A DNA stretch of 64,000 bases, taken from the IMG/VR virus record IMGVR_UViG_3300042308_001511, positions 1-64,000 of that record; one strand, written 5' to 3'. Below, piece by piece: positions 19,048 to 62,170 of the stretch; position 1 is the first letter of the stretch, and each line of letters begins with the position of its first letter. A program made the position numbers and the translations under genes. The notes beneath the pieces were generated by a model, which was not told the DNA's origin, did no database searches, and saw nothing but the letters and a program-made list of their open reading frames with translations.

Positions 19048-20361
19048 ATGGTAGAAACAAATGAAAGACTTGCCTACAAAGTGAAAGATATGTCACTAGC
19101 AGAATGGGGAAGAAAAGAAATTACACTTGCAGAAGCTGAGATGCCTGGACTTATGGCACTAAGAGATGAATATGGAACTACTAAACCACTAACCGGATCT
19201 AGGATTGCGGGTTGTTTACATATGACAATTCAGACAGCAGTTCTTATTGAGACATTGGTTGAATTAGGTGCACAAGTTTCTTGGTCATCTTGTAACATAT
19301 TCTCTACACAGGATCACGCTGCTGCTGCGATTGCTGCCGCCGGAATTCCAGTTTATGCTTGGAAAGGTATGAATGAAGAAGAATTCGATTGGTGTATCGA
19401 ACAAACATTGTATGCATTTGAGGGTGGAGAACCTTTGAATATGATTCTTGATGATGGTGGGGATTTAACAAATATGGTATTTGACAGGTATCCTAATTTA
19501 GCAGCAGGTATCAAAGGTCTTTCCGAAGAAACTACAACCGGAGTTCATAGATTATATGAGAGAGTTAAGAATGGAACTCTTTTAGTTCCTGCAATTAACG
19601 TAAACGACTCAGTTACTAAATCAAAGTTTGATAACAAATATGGTTGTAAAGAGTCTTTGGTTGATGCAATTAGACGTGCAACTGATATAATGATGGCTGG
19701 TAAAGTTGCAGTTGTTTGTGGTTATGGTGACGTTGGTAAAGGATCTGCAGCATCTTTACAAGGTGCTGGTGCAAGGGTTATTGTTACTGAGATTGATCCA
19801 ATCTGTGCTCTTCAAGCAGCTATGGATGGTTATGAGGTAAAGAAACTGGATAACGTTATTGACAGAGTTGATATTGTGGTTACGGCAACTGGAAACAAAG
19901 ACATTGTTAATGAGAAACACTTCCGAAAAATGAAGGATAAGACAATTGTATGTAATATCGGACATTTTGATAACGAGATTGATATGGCTTGGTTGAACAC
20001 AAACTACGGTTCTACAAAGAACGAAGTGAAACCACAAGTTGACATCTACAATGTAGAAGGAAATGACATCATTATTCTCGCAGAAGGTAGATTAGTAAAT
20101 CTCGGTTGTGCAACTGGACATCCATCATTTGTTATGTCAAATTCTTTTGCAAATCAGACATTAGCACAAATTGAACTTTGGACGAACTATCAAAACTATG
20201 ATAATCAGGTTTATGTTTTACCTAAGAAGTTAGATGAAAAGGTTGCTATGTTACACCTTTCTAAAATCGGTGTAGAACTTGATGTACTTACTTATGAACA
20301 GGCCGAGTATATCGGTGTGTCGGTAGAAGGACCATTCAAAAACGATGAATATAGATACTAA
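19048..20361 (+). CDS. ahcY: Adenosylhomocysteinase (SAH hydrolase)
   Basis: [78 protein letters not shown]. Confidence 0.98.
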
Positions 20362-38598: not shown

Positions 38599-40302
38599 TT
38601 ATCTCCTTATTTTGGATTCGTTTATTCTTTTGAGTTCAATGTCCCAAACCCTTTTAGCCTCACCTTTCAAGAATGTATTTTTGAGGTATCCTGCAAGTTC
38701 GTAGTCCTCATCACGAACTGCCCTCTGTATCTCGTCCTGTATCTCTGCGGCAGTCATATCTTTGTATTCTTTATTATTTACCTCTTCCGGTTCTTCTTCA
38801 CCGGAAAGTGTTTGTCTTACAAGTCTATCAATCTCCGACTCAGGCTCTTCATCAGTCTTATATTCACCTTCTGATTCACTACCGAACTTTTGTTCCATCT
38901 CCCAGTTTCTCATCGCCTCTTCGTATTCTCCCCAGATTTTGTTGAATTCTGCGATTATCTTCTCAATCTCGTACTTAGCTTTACTCTCTGAGAACTTTTC
39001 TCTGTTGAGTATGAAACGTATCTTGCCGTTCTCCTCGGTTTTGTCGAACGATGAGAAAATCTCCTTCGTCATTTCGAGAAACTCCTCGTCGGTAAACTTA
39101 CCACCTCTTCCTTTGTCGAGTGCGAGTGAACCAAATATTCTCTCTTTCGCATTAGGAAATGTCGCTGCACCAGCACAATTGTTTACAAAACTAGAAAACA
39201 TTTGGTTAGCAAGAGGACCGTATCTGAACTCTTCTGCTTCATCTCTGTATGAAGAAGTAGCTCTTTTTATCTCTTTCGCCAATTCTGGATCCATTTTAAT
39301 CGCCGCAGATTGTAGAAGTATGTGAACTCCTTTTGTTGCCTCGTGTATCAACATAGGGAAATCTATTCCGTATGCCCTAATGACAATCTTGTTGTAGTCA
39401 GTATTCTCTTTTAGTAGAGACAAATTATTTAGCTTGTTTGAAAGTGATTCCCATTTAACACTTACAGAACCTGCTAATCCCTCTGGTGCATCTTTGAACA
39501 TTGCTTGTTTCCGTCCAATTGGAATGGTCCAGTCAAGTTTGTCTGCCTCGTCGGATATACCACACCACAATTTTAATATTCTCTCACCTTTCTCTTTACC
39601 GAATATCTTTTCGATACCATTCTTAGCGGTTTCCGATAGGCTTATTATGTCCTTGGTCGCCTTTCCAGCACCCTGTGTTATTGTGTTCAAGAGCTTCTTC
39701 TTATCAATCGCCAGTTTAACTTCTTTGTTAGATAATGTCTCAACATTTTCTTCTTCTGATTGTGTCGCTTCTTCTGGTTGTGTCGCTTCTTCTGGTGTCT
39801 CATCATCATCAAAAAAACTGAAGAAATCATCTTCTTCCTGTTCCTGTGATTGTTCCTCATCTGATTGTTCAGACTCTTGTGCGAACTCGTCCTGAGTCTC
39901 TTCCTCTTCTTCATCAGGTACCTCCTCTGCTACTTCCGACTTCTGTCTTAATTCTGGCATCTCAGAGATTACACTCTTTACCAACCTTATGTCAAGTTCT
40001 ACCGGCTTCTGTGATGCCCTCAACACAAAACCGAACTCTTCCATTATGACTTCTTTAGCAAGTTCATTAAGTTGTTTATACCTTTCTTCAACCTCTTTCT
40101 TACTACCCTCGTTCATCATCTCAGAGGATTGTGCCATCAGCGAACGGATGTTGCTAGGTCCTTCTCGGTCGATTCTGACTCCGAGGTTCTTTCTAGCCTC
40201 TTCCTCAGCAGACGACATAAAGTCAGATGGAAGACCTTTCGATTTTTTCAAGTTTGCCTCAACTAAAAACTGGTCGAAATCTTTTAATGTTTTCTTTTTC
40301 AT
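38599..40302 (-). CDS. Acidic protein with CTS-like N-terminus and C-terminal UVR-like motif
   Basis: MKKKTLKDFDQFLVEA; FPMLIHEATKG; IQRAVRDEDYELAGYL. Confidence 0.7.
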   Translation of the reverse strand: MKKKTLKDFDQFLVEANLKKSKGLPSDFMSSAEEEARKNLGVRIDREGPSNIRSLMAQSSEMMNEGSKKEVEERYKQLNELAKEVIMEEFGFVLRASQKPVELDIRLVKSVISEMPELRQKSEVAEEVPDEEEEETQDEFAQESEQSDEEQSQEQEEDDFFSFFDDDETPEEATQPEEATQSEEENVETLSNKEVKLAIDKKKLLNTITQGAGKATKDIISLSETAKNGIEKIFGKEKGERILKLWCGISDEADKLDWTIPIGRKQAMFKDAPEGLAGSVSVKWESLSNKLNNLSLLKENTDYNKIVIRAYGIDFPMLIHEATKGVHILLQSAAIKMDPELAKEIKRATSSYRDEAEEFRYGPLANQMFSSFVNNCAGAATFPNAKERIFGSLALDKGRGGKFTDEEFLEMTKEIFSSFDKTEENGKIRFILNREKFSESKAKYEIEKIIAEFNKIWGEYEEAMRNWEMEQKFGSESEGEYKTDEEPESEIDRLVRQTLSGEEEPEEVNNKEYKDMTAAEIQDEIQRAVRDEDYELAGYLKNTFLKGEAKRVWDIELKRINESKIRR

Positions 40303-40316
40303 TTATATAGTTGTTT

Positions 40317-40502
40317 TTATTCGAAATATGAGTCAATATCATTCTTCTCGGATTTGTCAAGATCAGAATATATTTTTGAAAGTCTTTCAACAACCTCATC
40401 AGAACCTGACATAGGAAGTTTATCTACCGGTTTATTTACAGACTTAGTCTTTGTCACAACCGCAGTTTCGAAGAACCTTACGTATTTGTTCAGGTATTTC
40501 AT
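40317..40502 (-). CDS. Small protein with CTS-like N-terminus
   Basis: MKYLNKYVRFFET; TAATATATA at 40525-40533. Confidence 0.6.
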   Translation of the reverse strand: MKYLNKYVRFFETAVVTKTKSVNKPVDKLPMSGSDEVVERLSKIYSDLDKSEKNDIDSYFE

Positions 40503-40588
40503 ATCTTAGTGTTTTTTTGTAGGTTATATATTAAAATGGTTTTGTGCTATTTAACATTTTATATATAGAGAAAATACAACGATATAAA

Positions 40589-41185
40589 ATGAAGAAATTC
40601 TCAGAAATCAAAAAGATAAAGAGGTTCAACGAAGCGGATGACGCTAATGATTTGAAGAACCTTTCAATCGAGGAGCTTAGAAAGCTTGCTGAAAAAGAGG
40701 GGCTTATAAAAAATGATGAAAACGAATCTAACGAAGATGAGAATTCACTTACTAAGCAACTTGTGGAACAACCGGTCGAAAATGAAAAGAATGAAGACAA
40801 TACATCAAGTAATCCTTCTAAATTCTTTTCTAAACTTTTCGAAAGTCGTGAGATGGCACATATTTACCACTTACAGGTTAATGGTGAGATGGGATCTCAT
40901 GCAAAACATACGGCACTTGGTGATTATTATGAAGGTGTTTTAGGTTTTATTGATGATATCATAGAAATATGGCAAGGTCAATATGGTATTATTGAAGAAT
41001 ATGATACTATCGATACTACAGAAACAAAAACTAAAGATACTATTGAATACTTTAATGAATTGGCAAGATTTATTAAGGAAGAAAGAAAATGTATTCCTGC
41101 GGAAGACACACATCTACATAATATTGTTGACGAAGTAGTTGCACTCGTATACAAAACATTGTATAAATTGAAATACAACAAATAA
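40589..41185 (+). CDS. Ferritin/Dps-like four-helix-bundle protein (DUF5856-like)
   Basis: AHIYHLQ...AKHTALGDYYE...DDIIE...LHNIVDEV...TLYKL; start moved to ATG 40589. Confidence 0.7.
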   Translation: MKKFSEIKKIKRFNEADDANDLKNLSIEELRKLAEKEGLIKNDENESNEDENSLTKQLVEQPVENEKNEDNTSSNPSKFFSKLFESREMAHIYHLQVNGEMGSHAKHTALGDYYEGVLGFIDDIIEIWQGQYGIIEEYDTIDTTETKTKDTIEYFNELARFIKEERKCIPAEDTHLHNIVDEVVALVYKTLYKLKYNK

Positions 41186-41212
41186 AAAAAGCCGACACTT
41201 AGTCGGCTTTTT
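41184..41212. terminator. Bidirectional terminator
   Basis: aaaaaaagccgac-actta-gtcggcttttt. Confidence 0.8.
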
Positions 41213-41456
41213 TGTTTATGTCTATTGTTCCGTAGAAGTTATTGTTGACCTGTGTTATGGCATACCTACTCTTCACTGAAGTTTTCGGGGAAAAGAAGTT
41301 GTCTTCTTTAGATGGGAAACCCCATAGTTCACTCATCAAAGACATCCTCCTTTGTGCGACCCAGTTGCCCAATTTGATGTTTTCTGCCATAACATATCGT
41401 GCCCATACGTATCCAGCTTCTAAACCTCCAGACTTTTTACCTACGACTTCACTCAT
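41199..41456 (-). CDS. Small protein resembling the C-terminus of the T4 gp23-type major capsid protein
   Basis: EAGYVWARYV...FSPKTSVKSRYA...FY versus gp23 DAGxxYxPYV...FQPxxGFKTRYG. Confidence 0.55.
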   Translation of the reverse strand: MSEVVGKKSGGLEAGYVWARYVMAENIKLGNWVAQRRMSLMSELWGFPSKEDNFFSPKTSVKSRYAITQVNNNFYGTIDINKKAD

Positions 41457-41496
41457 TTTAAAAATAATTCAATTAATTATTATGTGAATTTTTTAA

Positions 41497-41814
41497 CTAT
41501 TTGTTTTCGTCGAATAGATATTGTCTTCCATCATCAGAGTAAGATTGTAGACTTGTAACTGCGTTGTCAACTTTGTCTATTGCTTCGTCGATTGACCTTT
41601 TGACAATTCGAAGAGCATTTATTGTTGAATCTATTTGGTCCTCTTCTTTACCATCTGGTATTTGATATTCAACTAATTCGTTTATTAGTGAGTCTGTAGT
41701 GGTTTGTCTGTCCTTCAGTTGTGCTACGAAGTCTCCTAATTGATCTAATATTTCTCCTACCCTGTCATCGTCCATTCTTTTGACTTCTGACTCGTTGAAT
41801 CTCTTTATCCTCAT
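41497..41814 (-). CDS. Coiled-coil protein with CTS-like N-terminus
   Basis: MRIKRFNES followed by a helical hairpin. Confidence 0.65.
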   Translation of the reverse strand: MRIKRFNESEVKRMDDDRVGEILDQLGDFVAQLKDRQTTTDSLINELVEYQIPDGKEEDQIDSTINALRIVKRSIDEAIDKVDNAVTSLQSYSDDGRQYLFDENK

Positions 41815-41847
41815 AAAGTGTGTATAAAATTTTAATATATATAAAAT

Positions 41848-42528
41848 ATGAAAAGAGGTAACAAACTAATTCTCGAATTCACCGAATTCAATCTTCAGCG
41901 TTTCAATGACACTTCGGCACAACCTGCAGCACACGTAGATGATCCGAGTCTTTCTACAAACGCCTTTGATAAACATCAAGACGCAATACGTGCTGCAATG
42001 TCAAGATTAGACGATATTATGCACAGACTTGGTGGAACGAGTGTATATAAGAATCTTAGGAGTAAACTTGCATTGGAAAAACAGGACGTCAAAAATCTTG
42101 TAATACAAAGAATAGTTAAGATAAATAGTATATCTTACAACGCTTATATAAGTTTTGTAGTAGATGGTGAACAATACTGGGGAGTAGTTGAGAATATAAC
42201 CGGAACCGATCCAGTTATGAAGTCAGAAGTCTTCAAAGATCAAAGTCTTTATCAAGCAACAGAATGGGTTATAAAGATTAAGGGTATCATTATAAAAGCC
42301 ATAAAAGATTGGTTGAAGCCTGAACCAGGAATGTACAAATTGTTAGAAGATGATATATACTGTTACTCTGTCGAAACTGGGAAACAATTAGAAATGAAAT
42401 CTGGTATAGAAATCGAACTAATTAGATCACACGCAAACTATATTCTTGTAGAATATAGTGGTGATAAATATGAACTAAAAGGTGATAACTATATCTACTT
42501 TAATTGGTGGTTCGAAAAAATTGACTAA
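41848..42528 (+). CDS. Hypothetical protein with CTS-like N-terminus
   Basis: LILEFTEFNLQRFND; TAATATATA at 41833-41841. Confidence 0.7.
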   Translation: MKRGNKLILEFTEFNLQRFNDTSAQPAAHVDDPSLSTNAFDKHQDAIRAAMSRLDDIMHRLGGTSVYKNLRSKLALEKQDVKNLVIQRIVKINSISYNAYISFVVDGEQYWGVVENITGTDPVMKSEVFKDQSLYQATEWVIKIKGIIIKAIKDWLKPEPGMYKLLEDDIYCYSVETGKQLEMKSGIEIELIRSHANYILVEYSGDKYELKGDNYIYFNWWFEKID

Positions 42529-44051
42529 AATTTGAATCTGAATAACGCACTAATTGCACCAATTGTATATAACGCTGCTATTTGATTAGATTCATATACT
42601 CTTAACTTCTTCTGTGCCCAATAACCATCGGGTGAAGAAAGCATAACATCGTAACTAATAAACCTACCCGTCATTATATCATTACCAAATGGATCATATA
42701 TTGCAGAAAGTGGTCCATAATCATAGTCGTATATGAAGAAAAATATGTCACTACCAATTATGTTTTGTCTCATTACGTCTAATTTCAACTCTTTCTTTTC
42801 AACTACCAATTTATCAATTGATCTCAACAAAGAATTGTCTGCAATTGTAGATGATGTAAAACCGTAGAAGAAAGGATATACTCCAGTTATTGATGCAGTT
42901 GCTGTATTCGATTCGAGACCATCACTGGCGGTTATCCTAAATACGGTTGTGTTCTGTTCTATCGGAACTATTGCAATTCCTTTAGCAAGTCCTGTTACAG
43001 TTCTCGATGTACCCTTAATTGGTGGTATTTGGTTTGGATTCATATTCGACAACGCCGTTGGATATGTATCGTTTGACCGTTTGGTTATTTCGTACCTAAT
43101 ACTTATGTTTGGAGTGGAACCTATTTCTGGATACTCCATAGTCGGATCAACTAATCTAAGTGAACAAGTAGGTGGAAGATACCCATATACCATTCTTTCT
43201 AAAATATCAAAGATTGATCTATTACTGAAATTTTCTCCTAAGTTTATGTCACCTATATCTACAGGACAATATCTTGAATCTGAGAAGTCAAGTGAGTATC
43301 CGTTCAAATATGTCTCTAAACCATAAATCGGAACGACAGTGTTGGTCGCACCATAATATTTTGGATCTGTTGGTGTTAAACCCACTAAGGAAACTATTCC
43401 TGATGTATAAGTTAGTGCTCTAACTTCTGTTGTGTTTGTTTGATTTAGGTCCTGTATGTTTGAATATGTTATACCATTTATCGTCACATATCCACCCGGA
43501 TCGTTAGCACCTGGTCCTTTAGATAGAACGTTTATGTCACCCTGTGGATTTATAATTGATAAATCTAACCACCTATTACCTGCATTATTCGAAATCTGAC
43601 TTGCCTCTACCGATGGTTGTAATGAAACTATTGCAGATTGTGTACCTGTAAGAAAGGACATAACGGTTTTGTATTGTGTCCTAGATATATCACTTTTTGT
43701 GTTGTAAATTGTTATATCATTTGCAGATAAAATAGATGTATTAACTACTTCTTCTCCTAGATAGTGTCTTTTACCAAAATAAATTGGCATCTTCAGGTTC
43801 TGGTTAGTATTACCAATACCTATAAAATATTTATTACCAACTAAGTTTTCTTTGAAAGGTACACTATCATATAATGAAAGTATAGCATTTCTCAATTTTT
43901 CTGGATATATTAGTTTAGATGTATTATCCGGAATATCTGTAAAAACAGCGTCTTCTGTGAAATGATATGACTGAGTTGCAGGATTTGACAACTGCAGTGT
44001 GCTACCCACCGTTACCCATGCCGTTCCGCTATAGTTACTATACGTTGCCAT
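42525..44051 (-). CDS. Putative virion protein, paralogue of the upstream gene
   Basis: Start moved to ATG 44051 (TGATG coupling); shares PDNTSKLIxP and DPxG motifs with 44051..45688. Confidence 0.7.
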   Translation of the reverse strand: MATYSNYSGTAWVTVGSTLQLSNPATQSYHFTEDAVFTDIPDNTSKLIYPEKLRNAILSLYDSVPFKENLVGNKYFIGIGNTNQNLKMPIYFGKRHYLGEEVVNTSILSANDITIYNTKSDISRTQYKTVMSFLTGTQSAIVSLQPSVEASQISNNAGNRWLDLSIINPQGDINVLSKGPGANDPGGYVTINGITYSNIQDLNQTNTTEVRALTYTSGIVSLVGLTPTDPKYYGATNTVVPIYGLETYLNGYSLDFSDSRYCPVDIGDINLGENFSNRSIFDILERMVYGYLPPTCSLRLVDPTMEYPEIGSTPNISIRYEITKRSNDTYPTALSNMNPNQIPPIKGTSRTVTGLAKGIAIVPIEQNTTVFRITASDGLESNTATASITGVYPFFYGFTSSTIADNSLLRSIDKLVVEKKELKLDVMRQNIIGSDIFFFIYDYDYGPLSAIYDPFGNDIMTGRFISYDVMLSSPDGYWAQKKLRVYESNQIAALYTIGAISALFRFKF

Positions 44052-45688
44052 CAGAATTTTATTACAAAGTTGTTCGGCTCTGATATAGAGCAAGTAAGAC
44101 CACTAACCCATACTTTCCATTGTGACGTCTGTCCGTTTACGGTCTTTCCACTATTTATAGTAAGACCTCCATTTCGTGTGGTTGCACTAAAGAATGAGTT
44201 TGTTAAATCGGATGAATTGTGAAGTATGAACCCATTAGGATCATACATCTTAGAAATTGGTGTTGTAAATGTATTCTTTTCATATATCACATAAAAGTAT
44301 CCACTACCAGAATAGTTATTGAGTGATACACTACCACTTACACCCGGATATGGTGATATTTGTTTTTTTAAACTTTTTACTATGTTATTGAATGACGTAG
44401 TTATCGTTGTATTGTTTGTAGTGTTTATTGTTCCTTGTGTCATTCCGTAGTATATTGGCCATATGTGATTAATAGGTGCGGTTGAACTATATGAGAATCC
44501 AGTAGGATATGCGTTCCATGTGTTTCCGGGCATATCAGTTGCATTGAAAGAGTATAAAGATTGTGTTGGTGATGATACAGATCCTGCAACAAGTGATGCG
44601 ATTCCTGAAAAAGATGCACCAGGTATACCTGAGAATGAAAGTCCACGGTAAGTTGAGAGTGTCTCTGTGTTTCCAGTTTTTGAAGTTATTATATAATCGT
44701 TTAAATAATCATATTGATCTCTTGCATAAAGTGTCAAATCCCAGTTGAAGTTTATGTTTGTAGTAGTTCCAATCTCTACAAAAGGAATTCCACTCAAAAC
44801 ACTACTTGCAGTAACACTTATTGATGGTGGAACTTTCGGGTATAGTATCTTACGTATAACTTCACTTAGTGGCCATTTGCCACCATTAAAGGATGTCGCT
44901 GAAAAAGAGAATCCTGCAGGAACTCCACCTACTGCAATAGGAGTCATTGTTGGATTCACAAACTCTAATTCATATCCGTTTAGACTAACAGTTCCACCAT
45001 ATATGTTTGTAACTTTACCAGCATCACCGAGTTGTGATATTGTAACGTTGGAAGAGTCCCACTTTAGATATCCATTAGGGTAGTTACCTACATATCTTAA
45101 TATTTTTCCATCTGTTGCACCAGCGTTATCACTTACCTTAGGAAATCTTATCCCATTCAATGCCACATATCCAGTATTACTATAAAGGTTTATACTTCCA
45201 CCACCCAACTGAGGATTTCTTACATTGAAATCTATGTTACCCGTAGATGTGTTGTATTCGGAACCAATGTATGGTGCTGTTGAAAAAAGTGAACTATATG
45301 TTCCTGCAAGGAATCCAATATTAGTAGAGTTCTGTGATGCTGAATCCGAACGTGTATTGTATACGAATATATCAACGTTTTCGTCATTTAGAAGTGAACC
45401 AGACATTATGTCCAGTGAACCATAACTTCTTTTACCAAGAACTATCTTTTGTTTTATGTCTCTGTTTCCGGGGTTACCAGAATCTATACCTATGTATTCT
45501 ACACCGGCTATAGTTCTCGTCTGTTTTATCGGAGAGGACGCCCAAGTTGTAAGTACCGCGTCTCTGACGTCACGTGGGCTTATTAACTTGCTGGTGTTGT
45601 CTGGGAGTTCCTTCAATATAGTAGTTATATCATCTTTGACCGATGACTCGAATTGAGTACCCATATTCACGCTGTAGGTTGCAGGCAT
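44051..45688 (-). CDS. Putative virion protein
   Basis: 545 aa, S/T/G-rich; TAATATATA at 45709-45717. Confidence 0.7.
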   Translation of the reverse strand: MPATYSVNMGTQFESSVKDDITTILKELPDNTSKLISPRDVRDAVLTTWASSPIKQTRTIAGVEYIGIDSGNPGNRDIKQKIVLGKRSYGSLDIMSGSLLNDENVDIFVYNTRSDSASQNSTNIGFLAGTYSSLFSTAPYIGSEYNTSTGNIDFNVRNPQLGGGSINLYSNTGYVALNGIRFPKVSDNAGATDGKILRYVGNYPNGYLKWDSSNVTISQLGDAGKVTNIYGGTVSLNGYELEFVNPTMTPIAVGGVPAGFSFSATSFNGGKWPLSEVIRKILYPKVPPSISVTASSVLSGIPFVEIGTTTNINFNWDLTLYARDQYDYLNDYIITSKTGNTETLSTYRGLSFSGIPGASFSGIASLVAGSVSSPTQSLYSFNATDMPGNTWNAYPTGFSYSSTAPINHIWPIYYGMTQGTINTTNNTTITTSFNNIVKSLKKQISPYPGVSGSVSLNNYSGSGYFYVIYEKNTFTTPISKMYDPNGFILHNSSDLTNSFFSATTRNGGLTINSGKTVNGQTSQWKVWVSGLTCSISEPNNFVIKF

Positions 45689-48607: not shown

Positions 48608-50050
48608 CTAAAGCTCGATTGCTTTGATCTCGTTGACAAGTGCGTTCCTGTCTGTCTTCAACAACTCCATAACATCAAAGACTTTTTCTGAGAATCCTGC
48701 CAAACAATATACCTGATTCTCCGGAAATTGCATTGTTGAATATCCTGCTAAATCCCAAGAGAACACGTGTGGGTTAGCACCAGTTTTCTTTTTCCACTCG
48801 TTGAACTGCTTGGTAGGTGTGTCGTAACCAATCCAACCTTGCATATCACTCAAAATTATGATATTATCATAGGACTTCTTCGCAGTTTTGAAGATGGAAG
48901 GGAAGTTTGTACCACCTCCGCTGAACCTGAACGAGTTTCTAATTGACATCACTGAGTCGAGTGGATTATAACTCATATAACGAGCAGACTCCGCGAAAGT
49001 CATTACATCACACGAGTTTACTTTTGCCAAAACCGCACCGAAAAGGCTAGCAATTTCAGATGGTTTACCCATCATAGATCCAGAAACGTCCATAACAACA
49101 AGACAGTTGTCTAGTTTAGGTACGTTCACAACGGATACCTCGAGTGCCTGGTTGATTGCCACGAGTACGTCCCTTACCTCCTTAGATCCACCAAGTCTCG
49201 AAATCTCGTCGTAAGCTGTTGCGAACCTAAATGGAAGTACCTTACTCTTAGAAATCAGTCTCGCATCAACTAACATCTCACATGCCGCAGTAACCGTATC
49301 TGGTGCTTGTTGGATAATGTTTCTGAGGTTTCTAAGAAGTGCGAAATATCCAATCTTCCTGGTTGATACAAGTTCTGCCCAGGCATCAGACTTCAACTGT
49401 TCGAGTTCCTCCGCATTTCCAGCAACCTGACCTGCCGCCGAAAGTTTTGCTTCCCATGTGTCGGTACTCTTCAACTTATCAGTGATAAGTAAAGAAAGTG
49501 CCTCTTTGTTCCTATCAGTAGGAATTGGATGCACGATGTTCACAACATCGACCAATTTGAAGTCTCTGTTCGACATTTTGTACTTTGCAATCTGGTAGTC
49601 ATCGAACTTGTCGAATGCAGCAGCGAACCCCTTTTTGATGGAGTTAGGAAACTTCACCTTACCTTTCCCGTTTTTAGAAAGGTAGTATGATAGGATCTCT
49701 GTCATATCGTCCGGTCTGGAAACAACCTTCTCATAGAAGGATTTACCCCACTCAGCACCAGAAACCAAAGGTGCAATTTCACCTGCCAATGCATGTGTAA
49801 TTGATCTCATTCCGAACCTATCTCTTGCATAAATCGCAGCTTTAGCCGCGAATACAGGATCGACTTTCGAAAGAAGTGACTTCACCTCGGACAATGTATC
49901 CGATGAACCACGATAGAACTGGTCACTAACGAACGACGTTAGTAATACAGAAGCGAGAGCTAACTCGTCTGATTGTTTGTAAGCCTTACCACCAGCTAGG
50001 TTTTCAGTAAGTGTTTTCGCCTTAGGCGACTTTGTGTTGAACTTTGCCAT
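48608..50050 (-). CDS. rsr: Ro60/TROVE-domain RNA-binding protein (Rsr-like) with C-terminal vWA domain
   Basis: NLAGGKAY, TWEAKLS, YFALLRNLRN, VLPFRF, vWA MIDAS DVSGSM, GGTNF, ILSDMQ, GFSEKVF; true start MAKFN at 50050. Confidence 0.92.
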   Translation of the reverse strand: MAKFNTKSPKAKTLTENLAGGKAYKQSDELALASVLLTSFVSDQFYRGSSDTLSEVKSLLSKVDPVFAAKAAIYARDRFGMRSITHALAGEIAPLVSGAEWGKSFYEKVVSRPDDMTEILSYYLSKNGKGKVKFPNSIKKGFAAAFDKFDDYQIAKYKMSNRDFKLVDVVNIVHPIPTDRNKEALSLLITDKLKSTDTWEAKLSAAGQVAGNAEELEQLKSDAWAELVSTRKIGYFALLRNLRNIIQQAPDTVTAACEMLVDARLISKSKVLPFRFATAYDEISRLGGSKEVRDVLVAINQALEVSVVNVPKLDNCLVVMDVSGSMMGKPSEIASLFGAVLAKVNSCDVMTFAESARYMSYNPLDSVMSIRNSFRFSGGGTNFPSIFKTAKKSYDNIIILSDMQGWIGYDTPTKQFNEWKKKTGANPHVFSWDLAGYSTMQFPENQVYCLAGFSEKVFDVMELLKTDRNALVNEIKAIEL

Positions 50051-50072
50051 ATATCTTATAAAAATTAGTATC

Positions 50073-50105
50073 AAAAAAAAGACCGATGTACATGTACATC
50101 GGTCT
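50073..50105 (-). terminator. Perfect 26-bp palindrome plus U-tract between the ncRNAs and the Ro ORF
   Basis: agaccgatgtacatgtacatcggtct (50080-50105) followed by a T-run on the minus strand. Confidence 0.85.
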
Positions 50106-50114
50106 AATAGGAAT

Positions 50115-50369
50115 GCAGACAAGAAAATTTAGCCTAAGCGATACAGAGAATTCTCCCGAAACTCTGCCGGTCATTAAGGTTTGACCTACCTGCCTTTCTT
50201 TTATCGGAAACAAGGCTTTTCCTATGAGCTTATCGTCCTCCAGACGGGCATTTTCACTAGTCCCGCGGTTCCTTTGACCCGGGCATTCGTGGCTTTGCTG
50301 CCGCTAAGCGTTTTCTCTTTATAGTTTAGAATTGTCTTACGAAGTATCTTAAACTATAGCTATGTCTGC
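50115..50369 (-). ncRNA. Long Y-RNA-like ncRNA (~255 nt) with a pseudoknotted internal domain
   Basis: Ends pair (GCAGACA/UGUCUGC; UAGUUUAAG/CUUAGGCUA); shares the UAG...UACUUCG...UxCU architecture with the neighbouring element; GC-rich hairpins inside; lies directly upstream of Ro60. Confidence 0.7.
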
Positions 50370-60343: not shown

Positions 60344-60647
60344 ATTCTAAGATATTGTCTATCTGTCTGTTGCGTCTTATCGTTTTGAGCAGGTTTTTAA
60401 GTTCCTTTTCCTCGAACTTCAACCGATTCTTGCTACTCTTACCGAGTTTCTCTTTACACCATTCACCCGGTTCACAGAACCTACCGACCGGAAATTTGTG
60501 TAGCAGGTAGAAGTCTTGGTTGTCCCAATTATCGAGATCTTCGCAGTAGGCCACTATCGCGTCGTCGTATTCGGTCCACACAGACCTTATCTCAGGAAGT
60601 GCCTGACCACGTTGACAGGATATTATGTAGACAAATTGTTCTTTCAT
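60342..60647 (-). CDS. Hypothetical protein with C-terminal RNRQIDNIL motif
   Basis: 101 aa, ATGA overlap with the polB stop. Confidence 0.7.
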   Translation of the reverse strand: MKEQFVYIISCQRGQALPEIRSVWTEYDDAIVAYCEDLDNWDNQDFYLLHKFPVGRFCEPGEWCKEKLGKSSKNRLKFEEKELKNLLKTIRRNRQIDNILE

Positions 60648-62170
60648 ATCTGCGATTCTAATTTTTTTATCTCATCGAGAACTGCTTTTAGTTCTTCTTT
60701 TCGATCCATCATTATCTTTTTGTTCTTTTTCCTATCCGCATAAACGTCTTCAAGCATAATAAGTGTAGGTGACATTCGTTTCTCAAATACAACTCCGTTC
60801 ACACAAAGAACGTGTTTATCATAATCTATCTCACGTCCGTTATCACAATGTGTTAGTTTCTTAGTATCCTGTACTCCAACAAAGTTTTCTGGTGCGATAA
60901 AGAATTGCCTTTGAGTTGTTGGATAAAGTGAGGCAAAATCGTATGTCACGCACCATCTGTTCATTCCAACCACCGGATCTTTTACCCACCCACCAGCTAA
61001 TGCTGACTCACCTTCACCTTTACCTTCTTTGAAAAGTACTATGTTATCCATTTCTCGGAATCTACCTCTCAAAACACCTTCAGTGATTGCTAATGATGCC
61101 AATGCGTTGTTCATCTGTGAAACAACGTCTACAATTTTTATTTTAGATAATGAAGAGATTGCATATACAATAGATATGTAATTTTTAGAGTCATGTATCT
61201 TTTGAACCAACACAGAATCGACGGCGTTGTAATACATAAATGTTTCGAAGTCATCCTCATATAATTTCTGTAAAGATCCTGTATATTTTATCTTCTCAAC
61301 ACCAACCAATTTATTCGATACGAAATCCAGTGAAGATGACTCTTTAACTTTTATGGATGTGTCACATATCTCATATAGTTGCATATAGTCAAAAATCATT
61401 CGATGCATAGGTACTTCGAATTCAGTTCCCCATATTTTATTCATTCTTTTGAGTGGTGATGATTCTGCTGGATTTATTGTCCATTCTTTCCCGTTCATCC
61501 ATTTGGTTATCTTCCTAGCTCGGTTGACAAGGTATAACCAGTCATAGTTGAGGAAGTTCCAACCGGTCATCAAAGGCATTTTTGGTGCCATCTTATGGAA
61601 GAATGTGTAAAGCATTTCAAATTCGTCTTCGTACTTAACATATTTGAATTTATAATCTACACCAAACTTCTCAAAGTATTTATTTGTGTTCTTCTGTATT
61701 CTAAGTTGCATATCTTCTGGCATGTCTTTTAGTCCCAGAAGTATTATTTTATCATCATATACTATGGATATAGACAGAACCTGTGTAGATGCTCCTTCTT
61801 TAACAACATTTCCTTCGGCATCTTTAACGTCTGCCGGTTCTGGAAATCCGTCAACAATCTCGGTCTCGATATCAAGGAAGTAAACTTTCGGAAGGTTGAA
61901 CTCAAAAAGCTCTTCCTGTTCCTTTGCTGGTAATCCATCTAAGAACTCGTAGATTGCGTACCTGTCAGGTCTGTCGACCTCTATTTGTTTAACGTGTTTT
62001 CCATCCCACGATTTGTAGTCTGGGTGTCTTTGTGGATCATTCTCTTCACACGTTACATATTTCATAGGATTCTCCCAGTCGTAGTATTTTAGTTTTATTT
62101 CTCCAGATTTGTCTACGTAGCTGGCTACCAGTTTTTTTGTATGTGTTAGGTATTGTGTCTCTATAAGCAT
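60644..62170 (-). CDS. Family B DNA polymerase, N-terminal part (3'-5' exonuclease plus motif A)
   Basis: ExoI DIETE, ExoII GWNFLNYD, ExoIII YNAVD, motif A DFASLYP; ends in the fingers helix without KxxxNSxYG or YGDTDS. Confidence 0.88.
   Translation of the reverse strand: MLIETQYLTHTKKLVASYVDKSGEIKLKYYDWENPMKYVTCEENDPQRHPDYKSWDGKHVKQIEVDRPDRYAIYEFLDGLPAKEQEELFEFNLPKVYFLDIETEIVDGFPEPADVKDAEGNVVKEGASTQVLSISIVYDDKIILLGLKDMPEDMQLRIQKNTNKYFEKFGVDYKFKYVKYEDEFEMLYTFFHKMAPKMPLMTGWNFLNYDWLYLVNRARKITKWMNGKEWTINPAESSPLKRMNKIWGTEFEVPMHRMIFDYMQLYEICDTSIKVKESSSLDFVSNKLVGVEKIKYTGSLQKLYEDDFETFMYYNAVDSVLVQKIHDSKNYISIVYAISSLSKIKIVDVVSQMNNALASLAITEGVLRGRFREMDNIVLFKEGKGEGESALAGGWVKDPVVGMNRWCVTYDFASLYPTTQRQFFIAPENFVGVQDTKKLTHCDNGREIDYDKHVLCVNGVVFEKRMSPTLIMLEDVYADRKKNKKIMMDRKEELKAVLDEIKKLESQI

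What the first reader, a model, noticed from the sequence alone, without database searches (positions are those of the whole stretch)
41199..41456. Stand-alone 85-aa mini-copy of the major capsid protein C-terminus
Seen: VGKKSGGLEAGYVWARYV ... NFFSPKTSVKSRYA ... NNFYGTIDI. This mirrors the gp23-family C-terminal segment (GYKG...DAGxxYxPYV...FQPxxGFKTRYG...YFRRV), with a short basic helix (QRRMSLMSEL) inserted. Inference: a capsid-derived decoy for capsid-sensing anti-phage systems, an assembly modulator, or an inhibitor of competing phage assembly.
Basis: partly seen in the sequence, partly recalled or inferred. Interest (0 to 1): 0.62.

Follow-up and report, generated by a model that had tools for sequence, protein, structure and literature searches.

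The report
Stand-alone capsid-protein tail mini-gene
A freshwater huge phage carries a conserved 85-residue gene that copies only the last ~65 residues of a T4-type major capsid protein, the hairpin that joins neighbouring capsomers, with a basic helix inserted at its tip; it belongs to a widespread family with no tested function.

Summary
Window 41199-41456 (-) is an intact 85-aa ORF. Its family aligns to the last ~65 residues of Gp23-type major capsid proteins (hhalign 98.9 %, E 4e-17), and the helix at residues 30-45 is an insertion. The gene is syntenic in related huge phages and under purifying selection (dN/dS ~0.2-0.6). It ends in a conserved terminator. In this clade it sits directly behind a conserved ~105-aa coiled-coil gene.

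It is one member of a large viral family: 44 small-protein clusters at 50 % identity, of which 13 are circular permutants. The same genome holds a second mini-gene made from a different capsid-protein piece with the same helix.

By alignment to T4 gp23, the copied segment is the two P-domain strands either side of the P loop. In T4 that loop is the inter-capsomer contact at quasi-threefold axes, and capsid-length mutations map there.

AlphaFold2 predicts only the helix with confidence. The complex test gave no answer. No RNA data exist.

My best reading, an inference, is a trans-acting P-domain mimic that binds the capsid lattice during assembly or stabilisation. The decoy and anti-competitor readings remain open. 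The phage's own capsid gene is missing from this 344-kb record, which appears incomplete.

The parts
41199..41456 (-). Mini-gene, 85 aa (P0001): a stand-alone copy of the C-terminal ~65 residues of a Gp23-type major capsid protein with an inserted helix.
   Evidence: ORF and translation. hhalign to capsid proteins 98.85 %, E 4.1e-17. Homologues of 83-86 aa at 72-98 % identity. dN/dS 0.2-0.58.
41385..41444 (-). Residues 5-24, VGKKSGGLEAGYVWARYVMA ('motif A'). Equivalent to T4 gp23 ~437-456 (...DAGIYYAPYVAL), the first P-domain strand before the P loop.
   Evidence: Alignments. G15, Y16 and Y21 are invariant or nearly so across the family.
41397..41399 (-). Codon 20: CGA (Arg) here, CCA (Pro) in every other sequence aligned. 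A natural polymorphism, not an error.
   Evidence: Position 41398 C>G is carried by 3 contigs, 114 of 203 depth, in run X2. The Arg allele is also in runs X3 and X6. Pro is nearly invariant in the family.
41322..41369 (-). Residues 30-45, NWVAQRRMSLMSELWG: a basic amphipathic helix inserted where the capsid protein has its P loop.
   Evidence: It is the only element AlphaFold2 predicts with confidence: helix 30-45 and 31-45, pLDDT ~76-80. hhalign treats it as an insertion. A helix HMM finds only this ORF and ORF71 in the genome.
41217..41297 (-). Residues 54-80, FFSPKTSVKSRYAITQVNNNFYGTIDI ('motif B' plus the last strand). Equivalent to T4 gp23 ~467-478 (FQPVMGFKTRYG) and the following C-terminal segment.
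   Evidence: R64 and Y65 are invariant, S63 nearly so.
41185..41213 (.). Bidirectional intrinsic terminator shared with the convergent Dps-like gene. The mini-gene's stop codon lies in the loop and its last codons (KKAD) form the 5' arm of the stem.
   Evidence: 12-bp stem, T tracts on both strands. The hairpin is kept in relatives with different stem sequences. Rfam gives only sub-threshold terminator-like hits here.
41497..41814 (-). Upstream partner gene, 105 aa: an acidic coiled-coil/helical-hairpin protein with the N-terminal leader MRIKRFNE. It forms a conserved two-gene cassette with the mini-gene.
   Evidence: A homologue is found upstream of the mini-gene in 14 of 22 loci checked directly, and blastp finds one upstream in L006, L009 and L012 as well (1.4 kb away in L006), at 31-50 % identity in alignment A3. 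Pfam and PDB give only generic coiled-coil hits, all sub-threshold in Pfam.

Best explanation
The gene encodes a capsid-protein-derived 'mini P-domain'. It consists of the two long P-domain beta-strands of a T4-type major capsid protein plus the final strand, with the P loop between the two strands replaced by a basic amphipathic helix.

I propose that it does not fold alone. Instead it docks by strand pairing and charge contacts onto the capsid lattice, or onto unassembled capsid protein, at the inter-capsomer (quasi-threefold) contact that these strands normally make. It probably acts together with the coiled-coil protein encoded just upstream. Its role would then be that of a late morphogenetic or capsid-associated accessory factor that tunes or reinforces capsomer-capsomer contacts in a very large head.

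Shown:
- homology and the exact segment copied;
- the helix is an insertion;
- conservation, purifying selection and synteny in a structural gene block;
- the partner gene;
- the absence of a confidently predicted autonomous fold.

Inferred:
- binding to the capsid protein;
- the site of binding;
- the effect on assembly;
- late timing of expression.
For: (1) The copied segment is precisely capsid-protein columns 439-503 of 505. By the alignment of a Gp23-type capsid protein to solved T4 gp23, that equals gp23 ~437-478 and onward: the strands either side of residues 457-461.

(2) In T4 those strands and the P loop are the main inter-capsomer contacts at quasi-threefold axes. P-loop mutations T457A, R460C and G461S change capsid length (PMC9546572).

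(3) The most conserved residues of the mini-proteins lie in the motifs shared with the capsid proteins: G15, R64 and Y65 invariant, Y16, P20, Y21 and S63 nearly so. That argues the same strand geometry and contacts are kept.

(4) AlphaFold2 twice predicts only the helix and no strands, pLDDT ~60 elsewhere. This fits a peptide that needs a partner.

(5) The gene sits at a fixed position next to tail-fibre-like and virion structural genes across relatives. It is paired with a coiled-coil protein in 14 of 22 loci.

(6) Selection is purifying: dN/dS 0.2-0.58, and 52 % protein identity is retained where dS is saturated.

(7) Other mini-genes in the same kind of genome carry other capsid-protein pieces followed by a similar basic helix, and the ORF71 family shares the helix significantly and aligns to a capsid-protein segment. 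That suggests a general strategy of displaying capsid-protein interface segments.
Against: There is no direct evidence of binding. The one complex prediction (relative G001's capsid protein plus its mini-protein) returned 'no answer' with score 0.00.

No RNA, proteome or cultured relative is available.

The mini-gene is absent from some related huge phages (LR756504, LR756500, PTm1), so it is dispensable for building this type of capsid.

The window's own allele has Arg at a nearly invariant Pro.

For 4 of 6 genomes with a known capsid protein, the mini-protein resembles T4-like capsid tails more than its own phage's tail. A partner co-evolving with its own lattice need not show that.
Confidence: 0.35

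Rival explanations
1. Weapon against co-infecting phages. The mini-protein mimics the canonical T4-type P-domain hairpin and poisons capsomer-capsomer contacts of competing Gp23-type phages. The producer's own capsid protein, whose tail has diverged, is insensitive.
For: 52 of 59 mini-proteins score higher against T4-like capsid tails (environmental or isolate) than against huge-phage-type capsid tails. For 4 of 6 genomes with a known capsid protein, the mini is closer to T4-like tails than to its own. The copied segment is an inter-capsomer interface. Presence among relatives is patchy.
Against: It has a fixed syntenic place in a structural block with a conserved partner, not a variable accessory island. 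Two of the six minis are as close or closer to their own capsid protein. The greater likeness to T4-like tails may simply reflect retention of ancestral motifs. No test of inhibition was possible.
Confidence: 0.15
2. Immune decoy or anti-defence protein. It occupies host sensors that recognise a conserved capsid-protein epitope and so prevents them from firing.
For: It displays a highly conserved capsid-protein segment without the rest of the protein. Several different capsid fragments are displayed by separate mini-genes. Presence among relatives is patchy. Capsid-sensing defences exist (my general knowledge; none was searched for here).
Against: The mini usually does not copy the producer's own capsid tail, which a decoy for sensors of that protein should. 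To my knowledge (not checked here), the known capsid-fragment case, the T4 Gol peptide acting on Lit, activates rather than blocks the sensor. The gene lies in a structural block with a coiled-coil partner. No defence-related family hit was sought or found for it. The literature search found no such decoy.
Confidence: 0.15
3. Co-opted for a non-capsid role. The hairpin is only a scaffold, and the basic helix binds nucleic acid or another target, for example as a regulator of late gene expression or a DNA-condensing head protein.
For: The helix is the only confidently predicted element. It is shared significantly with the ORF71 family and in similar form with other capsid-fragment mini-genes. 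Residues 10-37 of this subfamily weakly resemble the helicase-associated (HA, PF03457) repeat.
Against: The strongest conservation is in the capsid-derived strands, not in the helix. Helix-less members exist, for example P0028 and P0032. The HA likeness is sub-threshold: 3 of 34 members, best E 0.078.
Confidence: 0.1
4. Non-functional relic of a capsid-gene duplication, or a chance ORF.
For: It is short, has no predicted autonomous fold, and this allele has lost a nearly invariant Pro.
Against: The frame is intact in all 9 loci compared (8 distinct sequences), with dN/dS below 1 throughout and dS up to saturation. Start, stop and terminator are conserved. There are 44 small-protein clusters at 50 % identity and 27 Atlas clusters of 50 or more members.
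Confidence: 0.03

Closest known systems
T4 gp23 / Pfam PF07068 major capsid protein (HK97 fold)
   Same: Clear homology to the last ~65 residues: the motifs GYVWAPYV (gp23 DAGIYYAPYVAL) and KSRYA (gp23 FKTRYG), plus the terminal strand.
   Different: It is only 85 aa. The N-arm, E-loop, A domain, insertion domain and the full spine helix are all absent. A 16-residue helix replaces the P loop. It cannot be a shell-forming subunit.
T4 gp24 vertex protein (a capsid-protein paralogue with a specialised role)
   Same: A duplicated capsid-protein derivative kept alongside the main capsid gene in the same kind of phage.
   Different: gp24 is a full-length HK97-fold paralogue that forms pentons (PMC9546572). 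This is a fragment with rearranged topology, and some family members are circular permutants.
Capsid decoration or cement proteins at quasi-threefold sites (e.g. T4 Soc)
   Same: The proposed site of action, the P-domain junctions between capsomers, is where Soc clamps capsomers (PMC9546572).
   Different: No sequence relation. Soc has its own fold and is not derived from the capsid protein. Binding of the mini-protein has not been shown.
Capsid-size redirecting proteins of phage satellites (P4 Sid, SaPI CpmB, PLE TcaP) (recalled from general knowledge)
   Same: Small trans-acting proteins that alter capsomer-capsomer geometry.
   Different: Those are satellite-encoded scaffolds unrelated to the capsid protein. 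This one is encoded by the phage and derived from the capsid protein. No effect on size has been shown.
T4 Gol peptide (the gp23 fragment that triggers Lit) (recalled from general knowledge)
   Same: A short capsid-protein segment with activity of its own.
   Different: Gol comes from a different, N-proximal part of gp23. It is not a separate gene, and it activates a defence rather than serving the phage.

Membership tests
Pfam PF07068 Gp23 (major capsid protein) | Profile match at or above the family's gathering score | tested here: inconclusive
   P0001 alone scores 15.3 bits against a 24.4 cut-off, E 0.013. At family level 27 of 34 members match, the best at 4.5e-13, and hhalign gives 98.85 %, E 4.1e-17. 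Homology of the segment is established, but this sequence alone does not pass the curated threshold.
Pfam PF07068 Gp23 (major capsid protein) | Complete HK97-type architecture (N-arm, E-loop, spine helix, A domain and P domain) of about 450-600 aa | tested here: not met
   The protein is 85 aa and covers only capsid-protein columns 439-503 of 505. No further capsid-like sequence lies upstream or downstream. It is a derivative, not a major capsid protein.
Pfam PF07068 Gp23 (major capsid protein) | Forms hexamers or pentamers of the shell | not testable with these tools
   The AlphaFold2 monomer shows only a helix. The complex job gave no answer.
Stand-alone 'Gp23 C-terminal' mini-protein family (uncharacterised; defined here) | 65-131 aa protein with motif A (G-Y-V/I-W/F-x-P-Y) and motif B (S-R-Y ... 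N-x-x-F/Y-Y-G), not part of a longer capsid ORF | tested here: met
   Both motifs are present, with R in place of P in motif A. There are 44 small-protein clusters at E <= 1e-3, stand-alone ORFs in viral contigs, and 27 Atlas clusters.
Stand-alone 'Gp23 C-terminal' mini-protein family (uncharacterised; defined here) | Basic amphipathic helix between, or after, the two motifs | tested here: met
   Helix at 30-45. It aligns with RKxKIxKIF-type helices of other members.
Helicase-associated (HA) domain, PF03457 | Profile match over the ~64-residue HA repeat | tested here: not met
   Only 3 of 34 members match, best E 0.078. The reverse hits are weak per-repeat matches (14 bits or less) to residues 10-37, summed over many repeats.
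Capsid decoration proteins (Soc-like) and satellite size-redirecting scaffolds | Sequence or fold relation to a known member, and demonstrated capsid binding | tested here: not met
   No such family appears in the Pfam, PHROG or PDB sequence searches. Binding is untested. The comparison is functional analogy only.

The most novel reading that the evidence does not exclude
Huge phages encode a toolkit of trans-acting 'capsid-fragment' mini-proteins. Each displays one interface segment of the major capsid protein (the C-terminal P-domain hairpin here; the segment around the A-N-x-I-V motif in ORF71; E-loop and spine-helix pieces in relatives), and several carry a similar basic helix. They would act at capsomer junctions to set or stabilise the geometry of very large heads, or alternatively to sabotage the heads of rival T4-type phages. 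That would be a new class of morphogenetic or competitive factor made by miniaturising, and even circularly permuting, the capsid protein itself.
Probability: 0.25. Interest if true: 0.85.

Novelty: new variant of a known kind. Interest (0 to 1): 0.6.

Why it matters
How very large phage heads set and hold their size is an open question. In T4 the only known shell-side determinants lie at the quasi-threefold P-domain contacts.

This gene is a naturally evolved, separately encoded copy of exactly that contact element. It is conserved across a clade of 100-700-kb phages and is accompanied by sibling mini-genes made from other capsid-protein segments. That gives direct handles for experiment: supply or delete the mini-proteins and look at head size, stability and cross-phage interference.

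If it is instead a decoy or an anti-competitor weapon, it would be the first capsid-fragment gene I know of that a phage keeps for conflict.

The family also illustrates domain miniaturisation and circular permutation in viral proteins. Databases currently label its members only as 'Gp23 domain-containing'.

Tried and rejected
**Searches and predictions that led nowhere**
- A PDB sequence search with the close-homologue profile gave only a chance hit to an adenine methyltransferase, E 0.035.
- PHROGs gave nothing for the mini-gene or its partner.
- tblastn of P0001 against 50,697 phage records found no match. A more typical family member was needed.
- AlphaFold2 was run with 34 and then 52 sequences. 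Both models have mean pLDDT ~63-64 with only one helix. No fold search was run, because a low-confidence model gives meaningless matches.
- Complex prediction on relative G001's capsid protein plus its mini-protein returned 'no answer', score 0.00. This is not evidence either way.

**The phage's own capsid gene**
- I looked for it with Pfam Gp23 over six frames, with HMMs from 3 and from 5 related capsid proteins, and with the neighbours of relatives' capsid genes.
- It is absent from the record, and the whole head module of relative G001 has no counterpart.

**Ideas tested and not supported**
- That the inserted helix derives from the end of the capsid protein's spine helix: the best local hhalign and HMM placements do fall there, but they are not significant (E 0.37, negative HMM scores). 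It remains a suggestion only.
- That the helix is a general tag on many small proteins of this phage: rejected. An HMM finds it only in this ORF and in ORF71.
- That the mini-gene is multi-copy in this record: rejected. It is single-copy.
- That the sigma-70-like promoter hit just upstream of the ORF is meaningful: it is no more than chance gives.

**Expression and literature**
- No RNA runs hold this DNA.
- Two of the three literature searches looked for capsid-fragment, decoy or small capsid-like proteins in huge phages and found nothing relevant. The third was the T4 capsid-length search.

- No alternative genetic code was needed.
- Read laying was given 1,001 letters.

Full report
**What is there**

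Window 41199-41456 on the minus strand is an intact ATG-to-TAA ORF of 85 codons (P0001).

The window is the first 64 kb of a 344,083-bp linear virus record with 36.6 % G+C. Near-identical DNA occurs in lake and river metagenomes from 14 studies, so this is a freshwater phage.

A 1,052-aa neighbouring protein is 53 % identical to proteins of the 635-642-kb 'huge phage' genomes LR745206 and LR756502. It is more distantly related to proteins of Lak phages, Tenacibaculum phage PTm1 and Sphingomonas phage PAU.

**Is it a capsid-protein tail?**

Yes.
- On its own the ORF gives only a sub-threshold Pfam Gp23 hit (E 0.013, profile positions 307-356 of 376).
- 27 of 34 aligned family members hit Gp23 individually, the best at 4.5e-13.
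- A profile-profile comparison with six full-length Gp23-type capsid proteins gives probability 98.85 %, E 4.1e-17. Mini residues 4-85 lie on capsid columns 439-503 of 505, and the central helix is left unaligned as an insertion.
- tblastn with family members lands on the extreme C-termini of ~505-aa capsid ORFs (...DAGYVWAPYVPL...RTRYA..NFYGTVTVNNL). It also lands on annotated capsid proteins of Microcystis phage Mel-JY01, Flavobacterium phage immuto and Xanthomonas phage XacN1.
- One of those environmental capsid proteins matches solved T4 gp23 at E ~1e-25. That alignment places motif A on gp23 DAGIYYAPYVAL (~445-456) and motif B on FQPVMGFKTRYG (~467-478).

**Is it a real gene?**

- Nine clusters of 56-86 aa at 72-98 % identity exist in public data.
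- Gene order around it is the same in relatives.
- Relative G001 is collinear with window 16-64 kb at 50-93 % protein identity.
- Across 8 distinct sequences (9 loci) the frame is intact, and pairwise dN/dS is 0.2-0.58. A 52 %-identical homologue persists where synonymous sites are saturated.
- The gene ends in a bidirectional terminator shared with the convergent Dps-like gene. The stop codon sits in the loop, and the last four codons (KKAD) form one arm of the stem. The hairpin is kept in relatives with different stem sequences.
- Rfam gives only sub-threshold terminator-like hits at this hairpin and nothing else in 39000-44000.
- This allele has Arg (CGA) where the family has a nearly invariant Pro. 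Contigs from other lakes carry both alleles, so it is a natural polymorphism.

**The wider family**

An exhaustive profile search of 1.84 billion representatives found 52 proteins at E <= 1e-3. Of these, 44 are small (65-163 aa) and 8 are unrelated HA-repeat proteins, discussed below. The ESM Atlas holds 27 clusters of 50 or more members of 78-100-aa viral 'Gp23 domain-containing' proteins.

Members come in several forms:
- motif A, helix, motif B, as here;
- motif A, motif B, helix;
- forms without the helix;
- 13 circular permutants with the order motif B, motif A, helix;
- one 163-aa form (P0053) that joins the capsid protein's N-terminal VAVQPM.APVG strand motif to the C-terminal motifs, with the whole middle missing.

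The mini-gene is single-copy in this record. It is present once each in LR745206 and LR756501 and absent from LR756504, LR756500 and PTm1.

**Sibling mini-genes**

Related huge phages have full-length Gp23 capsid proteins (554-622 aa) plus several 63-83-aa ORFs that match other parts of the Gp23 profile. The four I examined each end in a similar basic helix, such as ...EKRKNSIKNIFP or ...IRKRKIENIFKI; its match to the helix HMM is weak for these four.

This genome has one such sibling, ORF71 (genome 151975-152187, minus strand; 67 aa).
- Its family aligns to capsid columns 339-380, the segment around the A-N-x-I-V-x-S motif, at 84.6 % probability, E 6.9e-6.
- It hits Pfam Gp23 in 11 of 14 members.
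- It is conserved in 28 clusters.
- It ends in KRKEKIKELWGISSKD. A helix HMM built from the P0001-type family scores this at 16.4 bits, while no shuffled ORF reaches 10.

The helix is therefore specific to these capsid-fragment genes and is not a general tag.

By eye it resembles the end of the capsid protein's spine helix (SKQIVAKIFELGDL), and the best hhalign placement falls there. This is not significant.

**Partner and context**

A homologue of the 105-aa ORF at 41497-41814 lies upstream of the mini-gene in most loci. It was found directly upstream in 14 of 22 loci. blastp also finds it upstream in L006, L009 and L012, 1.4 kb away in L006. Identities in alignment A3 are 31-50 %.

The partner is acidic and helical. 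It matches only generic coiled-coil families, below Pfam's cut-offs, and unrelated coiled-coil chains in the PDB. Its N-terminus, MRIKRFNE, is one instance of a leader found on about 13 ORFs of this genome, against fewer than 2 expected by chance.

The cassette lies among tail-fibre-like and virion structural genes.

**Structure**

AlphaFold2, run with 34 and then 52 sequences, predicts only the helix at residues 30-45 with confidence. It predicts no strands. The complex test on relative G001's capsid protein plus its mini-protein gave no answer.

**What the copied segment does in a capsid**

In T4, capsomers are held together near quasi-threefold axes in two ways. One is hydrophobic contact between P loops. 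The other is charge contact between a short acidic P-domain helix and a basic patch on the P-domain strands. These contacts stay fixed during expansion, and the capsid-length mutations T457A, R460C and G461S lie in the P loop (PMC9546572).

By the alignment, the mini-protein is the pair of strands either side of that loop. Its inserted helix sits where the loop would be.

**Interpretation**

The best-supported reading (confidence ~0.35) is a trans-acting P-domain mimic. It would gain structure only on binding the capsid lattice or unassembled capsid protein at inter-capsomer contacts, probably together with its coiled-coil partner, and would act as an accessory in building or stabilising a very large head.

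The rivals are:
- an inhibitor of competing T4-type phages (0.15). In its favour, 52 of 59 minis, including 4 of the 6 with a known cognate capsid protein, resemble T4-like capsid tails more than huge-phage tails;
- an immune decoy (0.15). The same observation weakens it;
- a non-capsid role carried by the helix (0.1);
- a dead relic (0.03). The conservation data contradict this.

**The missing capsid gene**

No Gp23-type capsid gene, and none of G001's 60-kb head/tail module, is present in the 344-kb record. All relatives examined have one, and the nearest relatives are 460-735 kb.

**Novelty**

I found no published description. Databases annotate members only by the Pfam domain. I class it as a new variant of a known kind: a capsid-protein derivative, but miniaturised, rearranged and separately encoded.

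Noticed in passing
L002:9976-10176 (-) = genome 151975-152175, outside the window: ORF71 is a second conserved mini-gene, 67 aa, in 28 clusters. It is made of a different capsid-protein segment (around the A-N-x-I-V-x-S motif; hhalign 84.6 %, E 6.9e-6) followed by the same basic helix (KRKEKIKELWGISSKD). It lies next to a NusG-like gene (by eye, not searched).
   Followed up: yes
genome 141793-142296 (-), outside the window: A 168-codon open frame contains YQTSIYGQGNVGDIKFYLDMYIN, which weakly matches capsid-protein positions 483-505 (E 0.74). It may be a third capsid-fragment gene or may be chance.
   Followed up: no
whole record G000 (344,083 bp); window 16000-64000 compared with G001 61-118 kb: The record has no major capsid gene and no counterpart of relative G001's 60-kb head/tail module. 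Collinearity with G001 stops at about 64 kb. The record is probably much less complete than the 91 % estimate, since the nearest relatives are 460-735 kb.
   Followed up: partly
window 41497-41814 (-), 40589-41185 (+), 41848-42528 (+), and about 10 further ORFs across the genome: A recurrent N-terminal leader, M-[KR]-x-[LI]-[KR]-[KR]-[FY]-[ND]-E (MRIKRFNE, MRIRRFNE, MKHLRRFNE and similar), occurs on about 13 ORFs against ~1.75 expected. From memory, it resembles the T4 capsid-targeting/prohead-protease leader (MKTYQEFIAE). These may be head-packaged proteins.
   Followed up: partly
window 41444-41827: In one lake metagenome (run X2) some contigs join 41443 (or 41420) to ~41828-41830. They skip or replace the 105-aa partner gene, so strains differ at this spot.
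   Followed up: no
window 41397-41399 (-): There is an Arg/Pro polymorphism at the nearly invariant Pro of GYVWAPYV. Both alleles circulate in natural populations.
   Followed up: yes
P0001 residues 10-37; proteins P0014, P0029, P0043, P0049: The profile of close homologues also pulls out proteins made of helicase-associated (HA, PF03457) repeats, through a weak likeness of ...GYVWAPYVMAENIKLGNWVAQRR to the HA core (G.V.VP..y....kLG.WV..RR). It is sub-threshold in the reverse direction and remains unexplained.
   Followed up: partly
proteins P0024, P0031, P0033, P0041, P0046, P0050, P0052, P0054, P0056, P0059, P0061 and others; P0053: Circularly permuted family members have the order motif B, motif A, helix. 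A 163-aa 'N-terminal plus C-terminal' mini capsid protein lacks the whole middle. The permuted and helix-less forms sit in unrelated gene contexts without the coiled-coil partner.
   Followed up: partly
L015:3150-3803: In one viral contig the ORF just upstream of the mini-gene looks like a GIY-YIG homing endonuclease (VFYIGKT...), by eye only and not searched, instead of the coiled-coil partner.
   Followed up: no
window 48608-50122 (-), 19048-20361 (+), 60644-62170 (-): The phage encodes a Ro60/TROVE-like protein with a vWA domain and an S-adenosylhomocysteine hydrolase. It also has a 508-aa family-B DNA polymerase piece (exonuclease plus the start of the polymerase domain) that may be a split polymerase.
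   Followed up: no
window 42525-44093 (-) and 44051-45688 (-): Two adjacent paralogous ~520-545-aa proteins share an N-terminal DNTSKLI.P...R.A.L motif. They are conserved next to the cassette in all relatives and are probably fibre or other virion proteins. The database searches assigned no function (only a weak hit to a PHROG of unknown function).
   Followed up: no
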